NCBI GenBank assembly: GCA_053919585.1
Contig: CM132801.1
Direction: 5' to 3' (one strand)
Origin: Euprymna scolopes
Lineage: Eukaryota
Length of the DNA: 64,000 nucleotides
Shown: positions 9,488-51,879 of the stretch, one piece after another
Position numbering within the stretch: position 1 is the first letter of the stretch
Layout of the letters: each line of letters starts with the position of its first letter
Notes under the pieces: generated by a model
The model's input: the letters and a program-made list of their open reading frames with translations, nothing else
Databases searched by the model: none
What the model was told of the DNA's origin: nothing
Translations under genes and position numbers: made by a program

Positions 9488-11599
9488 TGTTATATGCTGA
9501 AACAAGCCATATCTTCTTTGCAAGTTATTTTTTAAAATAGTTACATGCATGGAAAAGTAATAAAATTGGCATTCGAATGTTACTTCATGTACGTTTATAC
9601 ATTTAATATTTTATATTCCAAGTTAAAAATGAAAAAATACAATAAAAAAATTGGACCAGAAAGGGAAATTTTTAATTGCTTATATTCCGATTAAAATTCG
9701 CAGGGTTACATTTTATTGGATATTCTTGAGATGTAAATATGCAGTGCATACAAATATTCTTGAGATGTAAATATGCAGTGCATACAAATGGCAGACGTTG
9801 TAGGTGATCGATGCTTGGTTAAAGGAAAAGCGCAGAGTTGGCACAGAAAACTCAAAGTATCTTTGGCTGGAGTTCAGCAACCCAAGATGTGTTTTCTTTG
9901 TTTAAAATAAGTATCTCCTTGAAGTCATGCTAGGAACAGTGTTTGTGAGAACACCAATGTCCAAGATTCTTTGCAAATGTGCTCCTTTGGATGGAAATTG
10001 TCTAGCCATTATCTCCATGGATAGCTTGAGTAGTCAATTGGTGGGTGGTCAAATGATGATCACTAGCAAAGGCCAGAATCAGCTGGGGGGGGGGGGGTGA
10101 AAGGTTTCAGGAGATGAGAAGGGAAGGAAATTACAGCCCGCTCATTGGGGAGGACATGCATTTGAAGTTGGATGCTCAAAAAAAGTAGTTTGCTTTTATT
10201 GAGGACTCATAGTCAGTTGAGCTGATGAGCCCTGAGAGCTTTTAGCTAAAAAGTTATATTGATGCAACTTATATATTTTGATTTGGTCAGACACAATTTT
10301 TATTCTGCAAGTCTGCCATTCAACCTAAGTAAACGAGTGGCACTTGTAATTTCCAAAAACTATTTATTTGTTTATAAATTGGATTTGGGATGAGAATTCT
10401 TTGACTGAATTTGACATCGAACTTCGACTGACACAGTAAATGGGACAATTATGGTTTGTATAGTGAACGCATGTGTGCATGTTCATAGAGATTTCACAAT
10501 CTGTTTAAAACAAGAAAAAATAGTTAATGTGTCATGTGATATGGGTTTTTTGACCACTGCAACTGAGATCAAAATTAACTTTGAGTTATTTCGAAATTGA
10601 TAAGATATATCGATATGCATCATTAAGTTTCACATAGATGATAGTTTCAGAATTATTTCTATGTATAATATGTAAATATTTGTTCTAAAAAAATGGTTCG
10701 GAAAATTTTTAGACCTTATGTTTTAAGTCACTAGTAAAATAATGAATTTCATTTAAGCTGTTAAGTGAGTTCATATTTCTATCTTAAAAATAAAAAAAAT
10801 CTAAAAATGGTGCAATTGATATTAATTTTTTTTTTTTGTCAAAAAGATTTTGAAGTCGCAGGAATCAACAACCTTGATCAGGCTCAGTTTTTCATAAGCA
10901 AAATTGTCCCAACCTCAAAAATAGAAGCAAATCCTTTAAAAAACACTCCTTACTTGTTTTGTTAGATTTGTTAATGTTGAGAATTGACTTATTGATAATA
11001 AATGAATGTTTCGAGAAAAAATTTGTATAATTTTCATTCTTCTTTGTAAAAAAACATGCCAAAATTGTACAAAATTTTTTTACTCAGGTTGGGTGGTTTT
11101 TTTTTTTTTTTTTTTTTTTTTTTGCATAAATTGCAAAATATCTTCAAAAAGGCTAAACTCGCATATTAAAGTATATACTTTTTGAAATCCTTGGTTTATG
11201 GCCTATCTGATGCAATAAACAGATTTTTGTGAGATTTAGTCATTTGCAGAATAATTTACCCTGAAATATCCTATAGTTACAAAAATATTTTTTAGAAATA
11301 TTAGAATTTCCCCAATTCTTTTCACAATTATGTCTTCAAATAGAAAGCATTTGTTGCAAATGGATGTTGAATGCATACTATGTTGTTTGAGAATTGGCCA
11401 TTCAGATGTTCCCTGTGTCCGTTTGGGATTTCCTTGGTTTTCTTTTGTTTACACTTTCCTTTATATCATTTAAACTTTTTTTCAATGTTTTTTTGTTGCA
11501 GTAATTGTTTTATGTCATCAATATTTACATTTCAAATATACATTTACATAAGAAGGAAATCAGCAGTGTCCATTACACAAAAGCAAATCTTCCAAGTAA

Positions 11600-12924
11600 T
11601 CATTTATTACAGGTCGCAGTTTCCACTAACCAAATTCCCTGGTTATGATGCTTGTATCAGTAAATGTGGAAAAAAATTCAATGTAATCCAAGATTCTTCT
11701 GACTAGTTGGAATTCTTCAAATTGCCATGGATGCAATTCACTCGTTTAAAGAGTCGGCACAAGAATTTGCTGCTACAGAAGTAAAGTTGTTTGATGCTAC
11801 TGTTGTTGTTGGTGGTGGTGGTGAATGAGTGAGTGAAGATGTTATAACAACAAAGAAAAGAAGAAAGCATTTTCGTGATCAGTGTGCACACGTTAGCAAT
11901 AAAGCATATAATGTAAGGATAAAAATTCATGACACCATGAAAGATTTAAAGTTTAAGTAGCATGTGGCAAGACTAGGTGTTGCAGATTGTATTTGTATTA
12001 ACAAGCAGACAGACTGGACGGATCCTGAATTTATTTCTGATGGATCAGCAGATGTGCTGAAGATACTCTGAAGTTGTGGAAAAGTCTAGTTGATGATGAT
12101 GGTGTGGTTCCTACTAAAATTAGTGACTTTAAGACCAGGCAAGTTGTTACAGCGAAACCAATTTCTGTATCAGACCAGAAAAGTATCACCATTACCCATG
12201 CCTGCATCAATGGCACAACGTAGTTCCTTCAAGTTATGTATCGTTGCCACATAGACTACCAATAATAGATTGAGAAGTATGAGCTACTAGGTGACCTAAT
12301 TCATGCCTCCAGAGAAAAAGTCCTTAACAAAATTCACGGGGGAACTGGTCTATCTGGATAAATGTAATTATATGCTGGTAGAAAAGGTGAGACATCAAGG
12401 AAGACATTTTTCCTCTAATGAGGTTATTGATTGCATACAAGAATTGATTCCTGGTAATCACAGGGATGATTTGTTGCTTTTGCATTGCCAGTTTTCAACA
12501 ATCCTTAGTGTTGTATTTTCCTCAAGACAAGTTAACCTTGATAAGATGAAAATTCTTTACCAAAGTACAATGAGGAATATGTGTGATCATTTTAAATAGG
12601 GGAAGCTAAATCCCTCTTCATGGGATAATTCAGTATTTAGTCAAGTTGATGGCTGCAGATTAGGAAACTTGTCAGGAATGTTTGGAGTCCAACAATAAAG
12701 GCATCCTTAATTATTTGCAATTCCTTTCAAGAAAACCATCACCAACTGAACAGTCAACTGATGTTATTTGTAGACTGCTTGAATGTTCTGATCCTGGTGT
12801 TGTAAAACCGTCCAATCAATTGCATCCCAATAAGTATTAATCGCACTATTAGATCTTTATGCAAAACTTTTCAAGCTATCAAAGAAATTTTGTTTCTTTT
12901 ATTGAAGATCTCTTACTTGGTTGA
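11600..12924 (+). mobile_element. decayed RAG1-like/Transib DDE transposase
   Basis: HDTMKDLK (second catalytic D at 11943), DCIxC, RCAEDTLKLWKSL, TRQxVTAKP..THACING, HQGRHFSS, LGNLS(E)ECLESNNK (E at 12685), SRK..DVICRLLECSDP, HTIRS. Stops, frameshifts and an internal deletion; the 5' limit is uncertain. Confidence 0.8.
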
Positions 12925-13065
12925 TATTTTGTAATATGTATACTATTTCGTATTCACATTATTAAACTTACAACAAGCCCTGAATTATTTTTCACTGATA
13001 TGCCCAAATATCTAATTTGCACTTGTAAGATCAAAATCCCAAATTTAAGCTGTTTTTGCCGTTGG

Positions 13066-13281
13066 CTACTCACACCTCTGTTTGCAAGTCCATACGTCTG
13101 TACAAACTCTATGACCCCATTTGCAACAATCCTGAACATGACCTTTCTGCCGATCTTTAAAAGTGATATCACTTAAAAAATTGTCCAATTCTTTTAGCAT
13201 TTCCTTTCTTAGAGGTGAATCCTTTCTGCAATTCACCATCTTGTTATAACATGTTTTTTTCCTCCACATTTCTCTGATCAA
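13066..13281 (-). pseudogene. short ORF ending in a PHD-finger-like motif, convergent with the RAG1-like transposase
   Basis: ...HVQDCCKWGHRVCTDVWTCKQRCE* contains CxxWxHxxC and WxCxx(x)C; spacing is shorter than canonical. Confidence 0.35.
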
Positions 13282-13809
13282 GCAGAATAATTTTACATGC
13301 AGCCTTGGACACTATAAGCCTTTTAATTGCACCATAACTGTAATGGTATTCATGGCAGGTTGGTTTGTTTTATATTAGGGATCCGACATCAATGTCAATT
13401 AAGTTAGCTAGTATTAATTTTGACAGGGGTCACACTGAGTGCATGAAGATTAAGGTTATCGTGATAACCTTAATCTTTAAACAGAATCATTCCCAGAAAC
13501 TGGTGACATAAAGTTGAGGCAGGGGTCAAACATTGTAGACAAAATGAGTTTAATAATCACTAATGACATTTAGTTTTCCAAATCAGCCTCTCAATGGAAG
13601 CCATGCAAACAAGAGATGGCCAATAATGTAGAAATAATCTAAGGCAAATGTTACTTTGATGTCTGTCTGTGTATGTCATGCATTTTGTAAGTTGGAAAGT
13701 TATGTTTTAGAAGTAAATAACTAGCTTGGGAAATATTAGTCTTTGTCTGTACAGTCCATTCTCTTCAAATAAAAAACTTTGAAAAAAGACTTCTTAGCCG
13801 CATCAGACC

Positions 13810-14373
13810 CGGTCAAGATCAGTACCATCTGAAAGTTTTGTCAATGTGAGATTTAGAAAAAAAACGCTCAATTATTTCATATAGAAATAAATATTCATAA
13901 CAAGGGAGGGTAAAAAAATTTCCCTCTTTTTAAATGACTTCGACAAGTACGCAAATGCGTCAGGCATTCTTTCTTGAATTGGTTTAAATAAAAAAAAAAT
14001 GTTATTTCGCTGATCGCGTCATGGAGCAGTGGGTAACAGTCGAGTCGTAAGCTTTTAGTTTTCATGTTCATCTAATATAACAGTTGCCTTTTTTTTTTTT
14101 TTTTTTAAGTTTTAACATTTAAACAATTTTTATTTGCCATAACATTTTTCTTATTTCGAGACTTACGTAATGTGATTTTTTTTTTCCTTTTAAAACAAAA
14201 ACTGAATTGTTTTCAAGTTCGCTTAAACTGGTTTTCACATACTTCTTTTTCTCGCTGATTACATTTTCGTGGGTTTTTTTTTTTTTCTCATCTCTCTCCA
14301 CCTGGGCTGCGTCTAATATTCTTATTACACCACCTCTCTCTCCACCCGGGCAATGCCGAGTACCCCCTGCTAG
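13810..14373 (+). mobile_element. non-autonomous Helitron-like element, followed head-to-tail by another one
   Basis: 3' hairpin cccgggcaatgccgag then CTAG, immediately followed by tctattatataaaaagg; homologous to the minus-strand copy at 44590-45263. Confidence 0.65.
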
Positions 14374-14458
14374 TCTATTATATAAAAAGGAAAATTTGTG
14401 GCTGTGTGTGATTGTATGCCTGCCAAATACTTTTGATAGACACATTGGACCATGACAA

Positions 14459-16320
14459 ACCACTAAAAAACGCATCGAAGCACAAAAACTAGGAACTCGT
14501 GACTTCTGGAAAATCTACAACAGTGTAGTAAATAATGGGCAATCAACAATTCCCCCACTAACCAACAATCACGAGGTTCTTTGCTCAGCAACCGAGAAGG
14601 CTAACATGCTTGCCAGTCGGTTTGCCTCAAACTCCACACTGGACCCTCTAAACCACCCCCTACCTCAATTTCCTATGCGGACAGACGTCACGCTAGACGA
14701 TCTGATAATCACCCCTGCTCAGGTGCATGCTATCATAAAAAACCTTGACACTTCAAAAGCATGTGGACCCGACCTCATCCCAGCTGTGCTATTAAAAAAG
14801 TGCTCAGCCGAAGTAGCTCCAGTTCTCTCCAAACTCTACAACAAATGCCTTAATGAATCTTGCTTTCCGGGCTGTTGGAAAACTGCTTCTGTGGTACCAG
14901 TATTCAAGAATTCTGGCGAAAGAACTGACCCATTAAATTATCGCCCTATTAGCCTCCTCCCACTTTTTGCCAAAATATTTGAGACCTTAATTAACCATGC
15001 TCTAGTCCAGCACCTTACAGATGCTAAACTTCTGACCGACCAACAATATGGATTTAGACAATCCCGTTCCATGGCAGACATCCTCACTGTAATCTCTGAA
15101 CGCATATACCATTCACTGGACAAAGCGGGAGAGGGCAGAGCGGTAGCTCTAGATATATCTAAGACTTTTGACAGGGTATGGCATGAGGGTCTCCTCAGGA
15201 AGATTAGATCTTACGGTATCACTGGTAGAATACTTAACATAATTAAATCCTTCTTAGATAAGAGAAAAATCCAGGTTGTCCTCGACGGTCGTACATCTAA
15301 ACAATATGATATAAATGCAGGAGTGCCCCAGGGATCTATCCTTGGACCTCTGCTGTTCCTGATATTCATAAATGACCTCCCTGACAAAATTGCCTCTGAG
15401 ATGGGTATATATGCTGATGACACCACACTCTATAGCAGGCACGACAGGAAAACAAATGAACATATATCTAAAGTAATGGCAGAAACACTAGAGGATGACC
15501 TCCAATCAGTAGTGGAATGGGGACAAAAATGGATGGTCACGTTCAATGCCGCCAAGACAAAACTGGTTTCATTCAATAATTACAAGAAACCTTCTCTACC
15601 ACCTATAGCAATGGCCAACAACTCTTTATCTGAGAGTACGTCTCTCAAGCTCCTTGGCCTAACGTTCACAGGAAACATGAGTTAGAACAATTACATCGAG
15701 GGCATTGCCAGGAAGTTGGGCTCTCTCTACCGTGCTAGAAAACTTCTAACACCCGAAAGTATCCTGTACCTCTATAAGGCCACTATTCGCCCATGTATGG
15801 AGTATAGCTGTCATATTTGGGCTGGTGCATCGGCTACTAGTCTCTCGCTCCTTGACAGGGTTCAAAAGAGAGTCGCAAATCTGATAGGCCCTAAACTGGC
15901 ATCTAAGCTTCAGCCTCTGTCCCATCGTCGAAACGTTGCATCCCTCTGCCTGTTCTACAAGTCTTATAATGGCAAATGCTCTGAAGAACTGCAAGCACTT
16001 GTGCCCCCACAACATGAACACCCTCGACAGATCCGACAAGCTGCAAAATCCCACCCCCACACTGTAGAGATCCCTAGATGTAAAAGATCTTTCTACTCCA
16101 GTAGTTTCTTCCCCAGAACTGCTAGACTTTGGAATTCCATTCCAGGTCACTGCTTCCCCAACTGTACTGACATGCATAAGTTCAAGTGCAACGTGAATCA
16201 ACATCTCGCTGCCCTAATCCCTACATAGTACCCCAGTAGATGTTTCCCCTGATAGTAGCCCCCTACACCAAAGTGGCAATGTGCCTTGTTTGGGGTGAAA
16301 ATGTAATAAAATAAAAAAAA
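14459..16320 (+). mobile_element. young 5'-truncated CR1/L2-group LINE (RT and C-terminal domain, 3' UTR, poly-A)
   Basis: One frame ~14462-16228 with a single TAG at 15683; NYRPISLL, QYGFR, ALDISKTFD, GVPQGSILGP, YADD, RPCMEYSCHIW, LWNS; A-tail; TSD ATGACAA at 14452-14458 and 16321-16327. Confidence 0.95.
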
Positions 16321-50932: not shown

Positions 50933-51879
50933 GAATGTGTGTGAGGACACTTTTCAACCTATATATTAAATGAATTTTTTATCTACAGACTTGAAATTTG
51001 GTATATAGAGTGTTCAGACACGTGGAAAACTTTTTAATCGGTTTTCATCCAGAAAGGGCTCAAATTAAAAAATTTGTGGAGGGGGGGGGGGGCATCTGAT
51101 TGTTATCTGTTTAACTGTTTCACGAATGCGTATGCATGAATCATTCAAATGATAAATTCCTGATAAGAATAAGTAAGTTTGAAAGCACTATTTAAAGATT
51201 TTATCAAGCTGACTAATGGTTATCGTACTTACTGTTTTTAGGTTTTGGTTTTAGCTCGTTTTTTTTTTACTTACAAGAAGTGAACTGTTTAGAAAAAACA
51301 ATACTCGCATGCATATGTCTCAATTTCTGTATGAATTGAAATATAATATTTATACATATTTTATGACTGGACAACNNNNNNNNNNNNNNNNNNNNNNNNN
51401 NNNNNNNNNNNNNNNNNNNNNNNNNNNNNNNNNNNNNNNNNNNNNNNNNNNNNNNNNNNNNNNNNNNNNNNNNNNNNNNNNNNNNNNNNNNNNNNNNNNN
51501 NNNNNNNNNCTTTTTCTGGGTCAACGGCCAACTAGCACCATGTATATTTGTGTGTGTGTATATGTGTATTGGGGTGGAGAGGACTCCCGTAAGCCGTGGT
51601 GAAGGCAACCTTTCTAGGAAAAGCAAATCTCTGATTTAAAAAACCATAAAGCAGAAGACCATTACCCGCATTAAGCTGGTCTGCAGTTTAATTTGTTGCT
51701 GGCTATCTTGCTCTTGCTTGTTGCTGGATCTCAACATTTTGAACCAAGAGAGAGACTTAGCTGTCGTACAAAGCTAAGACTCTGTAACATCATATTTGTA
51801 TAGATACTCCCTCAGACATTTGGGCTCATGGATTTTAAATGTCTGAGGGAGTGGCACTCGTCTGACAAGACGTTGCAAT

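What the first reader, a model, noticed from the sequence alone, without database searches (positions are those of the whole stretch)
11600..13300. Fossil RAG1-like transposase facing a PHD-finger-like ORF tail-to-tail: possible RAG1L-RAG2L (ProtoRAG-type) transposon relic
Seen: the + strand frames give TMKDLK, DCIxC, RCAEDTLKLWKSL, TRQxVTAKP..HACING, ECLESNNK and DVICRLLECSDP, ending at ~12924. About 140 bp further on, a minus-strand ORF stops at 13066 right after DCCKWGHRVC..WTCKQRC. Known: the RAG1 core has D708, a CxxC, the segment R..ENL..W..RVKGVSAKPF..LH and E962 in ESGNK. Classical Transib transposases have a much shorter CxxC-to-H segment. RAG1/RAG2 and RAG-like transposon genes are convergent, and many RAG2(L) proteins end in a PHD finger. 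Inference: the transposase is closer to RAG1 than to compact Transib, and the convergent ORF could be the C-terminal remnant of a RAG2-like partner. Caveats: the PHD spacing is too short, no kelch repeats were seen at 13300-13800, no RSS-like TIR pair was found, and the first catalytic D is deleted.
Basis: partly seen in the sequence, partly recalled or inferred. Interest (0 to 1): 0.7.

Follow-up and report, generated by a model that had tools for sequence, protein, structure and literature searches.

The report
Dead, internally deleted Transib transposon copy
This is a broken, end-truncated copy of an old single-gene Transib jumping gene (a relative of the antibody recombinase RAG1) in a mollusc-type genome, and the small facing ORF is unrelated single-copy DNA, not a RAG2-like partner, so the finding is ordinary.

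Summary
Window 11841-12837 aligns to residues 344-691 of an intact 726-aa transposase found elsewhere in this genome (tblastn E 5.6e-67). That protein passes Pfam RAG1 and matches HzTransib better than amphioxus RAG1L or RAG1.

The window copy (about 10787-13058) belongs to an old repeat family of at least 66 matches. Full copies are about 2.6 kb, with CACAGTG/CACTGTG termini, asymmetric TIRs and 5-bp target duplications. The transposase stop lies only about 280 bp from the 3' terminus, so there is no room for a second gene.

The sampled short copies share a 0.73-kb in-frame internal deletion that removes the first catalytic Asp, so this subfamily is non-autonomous. The window copy has also lost both termini.

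The facing ORF (13069-13308, minus strand) starts beyond the point where every other copy diverges. It is single-copy, has no Pfam hit and no meaningful relative among 1.84 billion proteins. It had no polyA RNA-seq reads, and its length is what chance gives.

The long CxxC-to-His segment is real. It is a published trait of Subgroup I Transibs (Tao et al. 2022), as are the zinc-knuckle tail and asymmetric TIRs.

Earlier scan notes reached the same Transib classification on other DNA of this genome.

The parts
10787..11565 (+). 5' non-coding part of the Transib copy. The first ~95 bp, including the 5' TIR, are missing.
   Evidence: Family copies align from 10787-10844 onward, and full copies start ~93 bp earlier with CACAGTGGGCCCAG. 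No TIR-like match lies near the element in the window.
11566..11878 (+). Remnant of the transposase N-terminus (about residues 6-100 of the intact relative), including a KKRRKHF basic patch at 11853-11873.
   Evidence: tblastn of residues 1-130 of L023:781-2958 matches 11566-11757 to aa 6-67 (E 4e-5 in the small search space) and 11853-11873 to aa 94-100.
11879..11888 (+). Breakpoint of the ~0.73-kb in-frame internal deletion shared by the short copies sampled. It removes about residues 100-365, including the first catalytic Asp motif.
   Evidence: Longer copies L044 and L045 carry ~730 bp more here, and that extra stretch encodes the KD..DGAG motif. No short copy shows protein similarity before aa ~333-344 at E<=1e-3. 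One frame runs across the junction in the window and in L012.
11889..12921 (+). C-terminal half of the transposase (residues ~366-726), decayed. It holds the D708 equivalent at 11943-11945, a CxC remnant at 11988-11996, the RAG1-length ZnC2 segment at ~12044-12200 and the E962 equivalent at 12685-12687. The stop is at 12922-12924.
   Evidence: tblastn shows four segments in three frames with 7 in-frame stops. Catalytic and zinc positions come from invariant columns of A1 and PDB alignments. A 20-bp deletion removes the zinc-knuckle CxxC at ~12838.
12922..13058 (+). First part of the 3' non-coding region. The last ~150 bp, including the 3' TIR, are missing.
   Evidence: All copies stop matching the window at 13049-13058 and continue with ~150 bp of their own ending in ..GGGCCCACAGTG. 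An independent contig of run X6 spans 12881-13137 with one difference, so the junction is not an assembly slip.
13059..13366 (.). Single-copy DNA outside the element. It contains the 80-codon minus-strand open frame 13069-13308 (stop 13066-13068), read here as a chance ORF.
   Evidence: DNA and protein searches of the 5.9-Gb genome find only this place. There is no Pfam hit. HMMER against 1.84e9 proteins gives only two weak summed hits to TPR-repeat proteins. Depth is zero in three polyA RNA runs. The ORF length is within chance.
13366..14000 (.). Two unrelated repeats: an old one at ~13366-13788 (69-73% identity to other copies) and an abundant short one at ~13783-14000. Neither is part of the Transib.
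   Evidence: Own-genome DNA search found 2590 first-look candidates, with matches confined to query 308-942.

Best explanation
Window ~10787-13058 is a dead copy of an old, non-autonomous Transib DNA transposon. Its ancestor was a single-gene element of about 3.3 kb with the layout TIR, 5' UTR, ~730-aa DDE transposase, ~280-bp 3' end, TIR. It was of the Subgroup I type: a RAG1-length ZnC2 segment, a CTT1-like zinc knuckle and asymmetric TIRs. An in-frame 0.73-kb deletion removed residues ~100-365, including the first catalytic Asp. The resulting 2.6-kb derivative could not cut DNA itself. Inferred: it was multiplied in trans by intact relatives that recognise the shared CACAGTG/GGCCCAG/GTGGAAATAG termini, inserting with 5-bp target duplications. 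After insertion this copy drifted about 7% from the family majority. It gained frameshifts and stops and lost both termini, so it can no longer move. The facing ORF at 13069-13308 is a chance open frame in single-copy DNA brought next to the element by the 3' truncation. It is not a RAG2-like gene.
For: The family has at least 66 matches at 75-83% identity. Element limits, termini and 5-bp TSDs (TTGAT in L005, TAATG in L007) come. The window aligns to an intact 726-aa ORF of the same genome at E 5.6e-67. That ORF passes Pfam RAG1 (50 bits against a cut-off of 25). It and its family profile score HzTransib 96/208 bits, BbRAG1L 55/148 and RAG1 46/99. All 19 short copies lack protein similarity before aa ~333-344, whereas L044 and L045 keep aa 18-726 with the first-Asp motif. 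In family copies the transposase ends ~280 bp before the 3' TIR (L006: 2861 against ~3140). In the 3.8-kb young relatives the largest ORF downstream of the transposase is 70 aa. The facing segment is single-copy, has no Pfam hit or meaningful relative, and had no polyA RNA reads. Nothing in the genome passes the Pfam RAG2 or RAG2_PHD cut-offs. Divergence from the family majority is 7-12%, and 6.8% for the window copy.
Against: No phylogenetic tree was built, so Subgroup I placement rests on three structural traits and pairwise or profile scores. Trans-mobilisation of the deleted family is inferred from copy number and shared termini, not shown. Pfam RAG2 is known to miss invertebrate RAG2L (PMC7204232), so its silence genome-wide is weak evidence. 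Own-genome searches score only the best candidates, so a diverged second copy of 13059-13366 could in principle have been missed.
Confidence: 0.9

Rival explanations
1. One reading: a relic of a ProtoRAG-type RAGL transposon whose RAG1L faces the C-terminal PHD remnant of a RAG2L gene.
For: The orientation is tail-to-tail with a ~140-bp gap. The ORF tail is Cys/His-rich. The transposase has the RAG1-length ZnC2 segment that binds RAG2 in RAG1 (PMC9435367). RAGL transposons do exist in molluscs (PMC7204232).
Against: The ORF lies beyond the point where every family copy diverges from the window; those that reach the end go on to their own TIR and TSD. The segment is single-copy. It gives no PHD, kelch or RAG2 signal. 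ORFs of this length are expected by chance. The family and its relatives are single-ORF elements.
Confidence: 0.02
2. The facing ORF is the terminal coding exon of an unrelated, lineage-specific host gene that happens to abut the truncated transposon.
For: It is an 80-codon open frame ending in a stop in single-copy DNA. One metatranscriptome contig covers 12881-13137.
Against: Depth is zero in three polyA RNA-seq runs of the same species over 10968-13900, and no splice joints were seen. The X6 contig may be DNA carry-over, and it crosses into the dead transposon. There is no homologue among 1.84e9 proteins apart from weak summed hits to TPR-repeat proteins.
Confidence: 0.05
3. The in-frame deletion derivative once encoded a truncated, catalytically dead transposase (N-terminal ~100 aa fused to the C-terminal ~360 aa) that acted as a regulator of transposition, in the manner of P-element KP repressors, rather than being a passive non-autonomous element.
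For: The junction is in-frame in the window and in L012. The retained part carries the ZnC2/ZnH2, CTD and zinc-knuckle DNA-contact regions.
Against: Every copy examined is full of stops and frameshifts. There is no sign of selection and no expression. One deletion in three is in-frame by chance.
Confidence: 0.03

Closest known systems
Subgroup I Transib transposons (Tao et al. 2022, Natl Sci Rev, PMC9435367)
   Same: It is a single transposase gene. It has a CAC-heptamer and asymmetric TIRs, with the second conserved block 9 or 18 bp after the heptamer, and 5-bp TSDs. It keeps the segment equivalent to RAG1 alpha11-alpha12. It has a CTT1-type C-terminal knuckle, Cx2Cx3-D-Hx4H in the family.
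   Different: In the knuckle the Gly before His is Asp and the last ligand is His, not Cys. Placement by tree was not tested. The window copy is a deleted, truncated fossil that has itself lost the knuckle's CxxC.
HzTransib of Helicoverpa zea (PDB 6pqn; Subgroup II Transib)
   Same: It is the best-scoring solved relative (96 bits pairwise, 208 bits with the family profile). It shares the DDE core, ZnH2, CTD and the LSEE..E..NK motif.
   Different: HzTransib lacks ~38-45 residues between the CxxC and the conserved His that this family has. According to PMC9435367 it also has a different tail (CTT2).
ProtoRAG / RAGL transposons (amphioxus BbRAG1L-RAG2L, PDB 6b40; bivalve and nemertean RAGL, PMC7204232)
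   Same: They share a homologous DDE core aligned end to end (148 bits with the profile), the ZnC2 segment, a CTT*-like knuckle, a heptamer-type TIR and 5-bp TSDs.
   Different: This family has no RAG2L gene inside the TIRs. The transposase is ~730 aa with only the Pfam RAG1 core detected and no RING/ZDD N-terminal domains. It scores lower against RAG1L than against Transib.
Non-autonomous internal-deletion derivatives of DNA transposons (for example Ds of Ac, or KP of the P element)
   Same: A shared internal deletion removes an essential catalytic part while both termini are kept, and the short form is the more common among the copies sampled.
   Different: Mobilisation in trans is inferred here, not demonstrated.

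Membership tests
Transib/RAG1 transposase superfamily | Sequence homology to the RAG1 core / Transib transposase | tested here: met
   Window pieces alone gave no Pfam or PDB hit. They do align at E 5.6e-67 to an intact ORF of the same genome. That ORF passes Pfam PF12940 (50 bits, cut-off 25) and hits 6pqn, 6b40 and RAG1 structures.
Transib/RAG1 transposase superfamily | DDE catalytic triad | tested here: not met
   In the window the second Asp (11943-11945) and the Glu (12685-12687) are present. The first Asp lies in the deleted 0.73 kb. The triad is complete in the intact relative (D270, D380, E641 invariant). The window copy is therefore a member by descent, not a functional one.
Transib/RAG1 transposase superfamily | 5-bp target site duplication and TIRs starting with a CAC heptamer | tested here: met
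   This is met for the family: CACAGTG / CACTGTG termini, TSDs TTGAT (L005) and TAATG (L007), and 4 of 5 young copies with a perfect 5-bp TSD. It is not met in the window copy, where both termini are lost.
Subgroup I Transib (PMC9435367) | Retains the ZnB segment equivalent to RAG1 alpha11-alpha12 | tested here: met
   Profile positions 411-469 align to BbRAG1L and RAG1 but fall in a gap against HzTransib, which has 21 residues there. The segment is present in the window at ~12044-12200. That it forms two helices was not tested by structure.
Subgroup I Transib (PMC9435367) | CTT1-type C-terminal zinc knuckle (Cx2Cx3GHx4C in RAG1L) | tested here: met
   Family copies and relatives carry C-x2-C-x3-D-H-x4-H, with C692 and C695 nearly invariant. 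It is a variant in two positions. In the window the CxxC is removed by a 20-bp deletion.
Subgroup I Transib (PMC9435367) | Asymmetric TIRs | tested here: met
   The second conserved block GTGGAAATAG begins 9 nt after the heptamer at the 5' end and 18 nt after it at the 3' end, in both the old and the young family.
Subgroup I Transib (PMC9435367) | Groups with Subgroup I in a maximum-likelihood tree of core regions | not tested
   Reference RAG1L and Transib sequences could not be brought in by reference. Only score ranking is available.
RAGL / ProtoRAG transposon | Convergent RAG2L gene (kelch propeller, with or without PHD) between the RAG1L gene and the 3' TIR | tested here: not met
   Only ~280 bp separate the transposase stop and the 3' TIR in family copies. 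In the young relatives the gap is 864 bp and the largest ORF is 70 aa. The window's facing ORF lies outside the element, is single-copy and is not kelch or PHD.
RAGL / ProtoRAG transposon | RAG2/RAG2L homologue detectable in the genome | tested here: inconclusive
   PF03089 best hit is 20 bits (cut-off 21, E 0.66). PF13341 best hit is 23.7 bits (cut-off 27). These vertebrate-based models are known to miss invertebrate RAG2L (PMC7204232).
PHD finger | C4HC3 ligand pattern over ~50-60 residues, with a Pfam PHD match | tested here: not met
   The ORF tail has 5 Cys and 2 His in 24 residues with no CxxC pair. No Pfam family is found at E up to 10.

The most novel reading that the evidence does not exclude
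The Transib transposases of this genome keep the ZnC2 segment that contacts RAG2 in RAG1. They might cooperate with an unlinked, highly divergent RAG2L-like kelch protein encoded elsewhere in the genome that the vertebrate-based Pfam RAG2 models cannot see. That would be a split intermediate between Transib and RAGL. Nothing in this window speaks for it, and the evidence only fails to exclude it genome-wide.
Probability: 0.03. Interest if true: 0.6.

Novelty: new member of a known kind. Interest (0 to 1): 0.12.

Why it matters
It matters little. A real RAG1L-RAG2L relic would have added a RAGL locus in a mollusc, but even that kind is already published for bivalves (PMC7204232). What is actually here is one more decayed copy of a Transib family whose RAG1-like extras were described as Subgroup I traits in 2022. 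The one useful by-product is that this genome holds two related lineages. One is an old, mostly deleted Subgroup I-type family. The other is a young family with intact reading frames. Together they could serve comparative work on how Transib and RAGL diverged.

Tried and rejected
- Pfam on nine window pieces and six longer pieces from other copies found nothing relevant. A PDB sequence search with a 207-aa piece found only chance urease hits. The fragments are too short and decayed, so homology had to go through an intact relative found with PF12940 in the genome.
- PF26100, which is precomputed on all homologues and named RAG1_RNase_H, is not in the local Pfam copy.
- Liu et al. 2019 (HzTransib structure) is not held, so the alpha11-alpha12 statement is taken from PMC9435367.
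- TIR pattern scans of the window gave only chance-level hits.
- A tree with RAG1L, RAG1 and Subgroup I/II Transibs was not built. The reference sequences exist only in PDB alignments or a paper's supplement and could not be supplied by reference. A further costly protein search was not justified, because the protein was no longer open.
- No structure was predicted, because the sequence and profile alignments already answered the segment question.
- Majority-rule columns of 13 copies were used inside a script only to measure distances.

Full report
**Observation**

The frame shared with other copies ends at 12922-12924. One detail differs: the window reads DCIC, so the CxxC has lost a codon here. 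The minus-strand open frame is real. It has 80 codons at 13069-13308, with its stop at 13066-13068.

**What the + strand is**

Pieces of the window alone hit nothing in Pfam or the PDB. A search of the window's own 5.9-Gb genome with Pfam RAG1 (PF12940) found 32 places, many with uninterrupted frames of ~736 codons.
- One of these, L023:781-2958 (726 aa), passes PF12940 at 50 bits against a cut-off of 25.
- It matches HzTransib (6pqn) at 96 bits, amphioxus RAG1L (6b40) at 55 bits and zebrafish RAG1 at 46 bits.
- tblastn of this protein against the window gives four collinear segments covering residues 344-691 at 11841-12837. The combined E-value is 5.6e-67 and identity is 44-53%. The segments lie in three frames with seven in-frame stops.
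- A weaker match places residues 6-67 at 11566-11757 and a basic patch (residues 94-100) at 11853-11873.
- From invariant columns of a 25-protein alignment (A1) and the PDB alignments, the D708 equivalent is the Asp of MKDLK (11943-11945). The E962 equivalent is the second Glu of ECLESNNK (12685-12687).

**The element and its limits**

The stretch 11600-13300 has at least 66 matches in the genome at 75-83% identity.
- All copies stop matching the window at 13049-13058. On the left they start matching at 10787-10844.
- Compared with each other, full copies are ~2575 bp (for example L006 566-3140). They run ~93 bp further left and ~150 bp further right than the window copy.
- Their termini read CACAGTGGGCCCAG at the 5' end and, as reverse complement, CACTGTGGGCCCAG at the 3' end.
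- Several copies have 5-bp target duplications: TTGAT in L005 and TAATG in L007.
- A second conserved block, GTGGAAATAG, follows the heptamer after 9 nt at the 5' end and after 18 nt at the 3' end, so the TIRs are asymmetric.
- In the window both termini are gone, and pattern scans give only chance hits.
- A contig from an independent run (X6) spans 12881-13137 with one difference, so the right-hand junction is real.

**Subfamily-wide deletion**

In all 19 short copies, protein similarity to the intact transposase begins only at residue ~333-344. Two longer copies, L044 and L045, keep residues 18-726. They carry ~730 bp more at the point corresponding to window 11879-11888. That extra stretch encodes the first catalytic Asp motif, which reads KDDSDGAG in L045.

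The window copy therefore belongs to a non-autonomous subfamily descended from one internally deleted element. The junction is in-frame in the window and in L012. Its multiplication in trans by intact relatives with near-identical termini is an inference.

Copies differ from the majority of 13 aligned copies by 7-12%, and the window copy by 6.8%. In the window a further 20-bp deletion removes the CxxC of the C-terminal zinc knuckle.

**The facing ORF**

The ORF begins 8-17 bp beyond the point where every family copy diverges from the window, so it lies outside the element.
- The segment 13055-13370 and the ORF's protein each find only this one place in the genome.
- Pfam finds nothing at E up to 10.
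- HMMER against 1.84 billion representative proteins gives two hits (E 9e-6 and 4e-5). Each is built from 7-10 weak stretches of residues 11-59 against TPR-repeat proteins. The Cys-rich tail is unmatched.
- Three polyA RNA-seq runs of the same species show zero depth from 10968 to 13900.
- The window has 74 open frames of 81 aa or more, against 26 in composition-matched shuffles, so such an ORF is expected by chance.
- The tail has no CxxC pair and cannot form a C4HC3 PHD finger.
- Beyond it, 13366-13788 and 13783-14000 are two other repeats.

**No room for a second gene**

In family copies the transposase frame ends ~280 bp before the 3' TIR (L006: 2861 against ~3140). The young relatives are 3.8 kb (L021 22-3822) and 98-99% identical to each other. 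Their termini are CACAGTGGGCCCAG, and four of five copies have perfect 5-bp TSDs. The 864 bp after their transposase gene hold no ORF above 70 aa.

Nothing in the genome passes the Pfam RAG2 or RAG2_PHD cut-offs. This last point is weak evidence, because these models miss invertebrate RAG2L (PMC7204232).

**The RAG1-like segment**

With the family profile, HzTransib scores 208 bits but in two pieces, leaving profile positions 411-469 against only 21 residues of HzTransib. BbRAG1L (148 bits) and RAG1 (99 bits) align straight through.

Tao et al. 2022 (PMC9435367) describe exactly this. Subgroup I Transibs keep the alpha11-alpha12 region of the zinc-binding domain, a CTT1 tail and asymmetric TIRs. 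Subgroup II, which includes HzTransib, lost these traits. All three are met by this family. The knuckle is a variant, with Asp for Gly and a final His for Cys. A tree was not built, so subgroup membership rests on these traits and on score ranking.

**Context**

Two runs labelled mollusc metagenome hold the stretch. Homologues of the intact protein occur in krill and rotifer records and in many short assembly contigs, all carrying PF26100 RAG1_RNase_H. Five earlier notes of this scan, on other DNA of the same genome, reached the same Transib classification. I checked their paper and their traits myself.

**Verdict**

This is an ordinary fossil of a known kind of transposon.

Noticed in passing
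L021 22-3822; L023, L024, L025, L026 (other chromosomes of the same genome): This is a young 3.8-kb Transib family with copies 98-99% identical to each other. Several have uninterrupted ~736-codon frames, termini equal to the RSS consensus heptamer CACAGTG, asymmetric TIRs and 5-bp TSDs. It may still be active. Earlier scan notes already describe this family.
   Followed up: partly
L022 1300-3521 (minus strand): A second RAG1-Pfam-positive lineage has ~68% DNA identity to the young family. Its transposase frame is split in two (250 + 526 aa).
   Followed up: no
L046 2936-3491: One old-family copy carries a tandem expansion of about 12 copies of a ~46-bp unit taken from the 3' part of the transposase region (element positions 2155-2204 of L006).
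   Followed up: no
window 14452-15685: A non-LTR retrotransposon-like reverse-transcriptase ORF (359 aa, + strand, from 14606). RNA-seq depth rises from ~0 to 15-115 reads from 14452 on, with many variant letters, as expected of a transcribed multi-copy family.
   Followed up: no
window 13783-14000: A very abundant short repeat (2590 first-look candidates in the genome, 76-87% identity), possibly SINE-like.
   Followed up: no
window 51376-51509: A run of 134 N (assembly gap or masked), left untouched.
   Followed up: no
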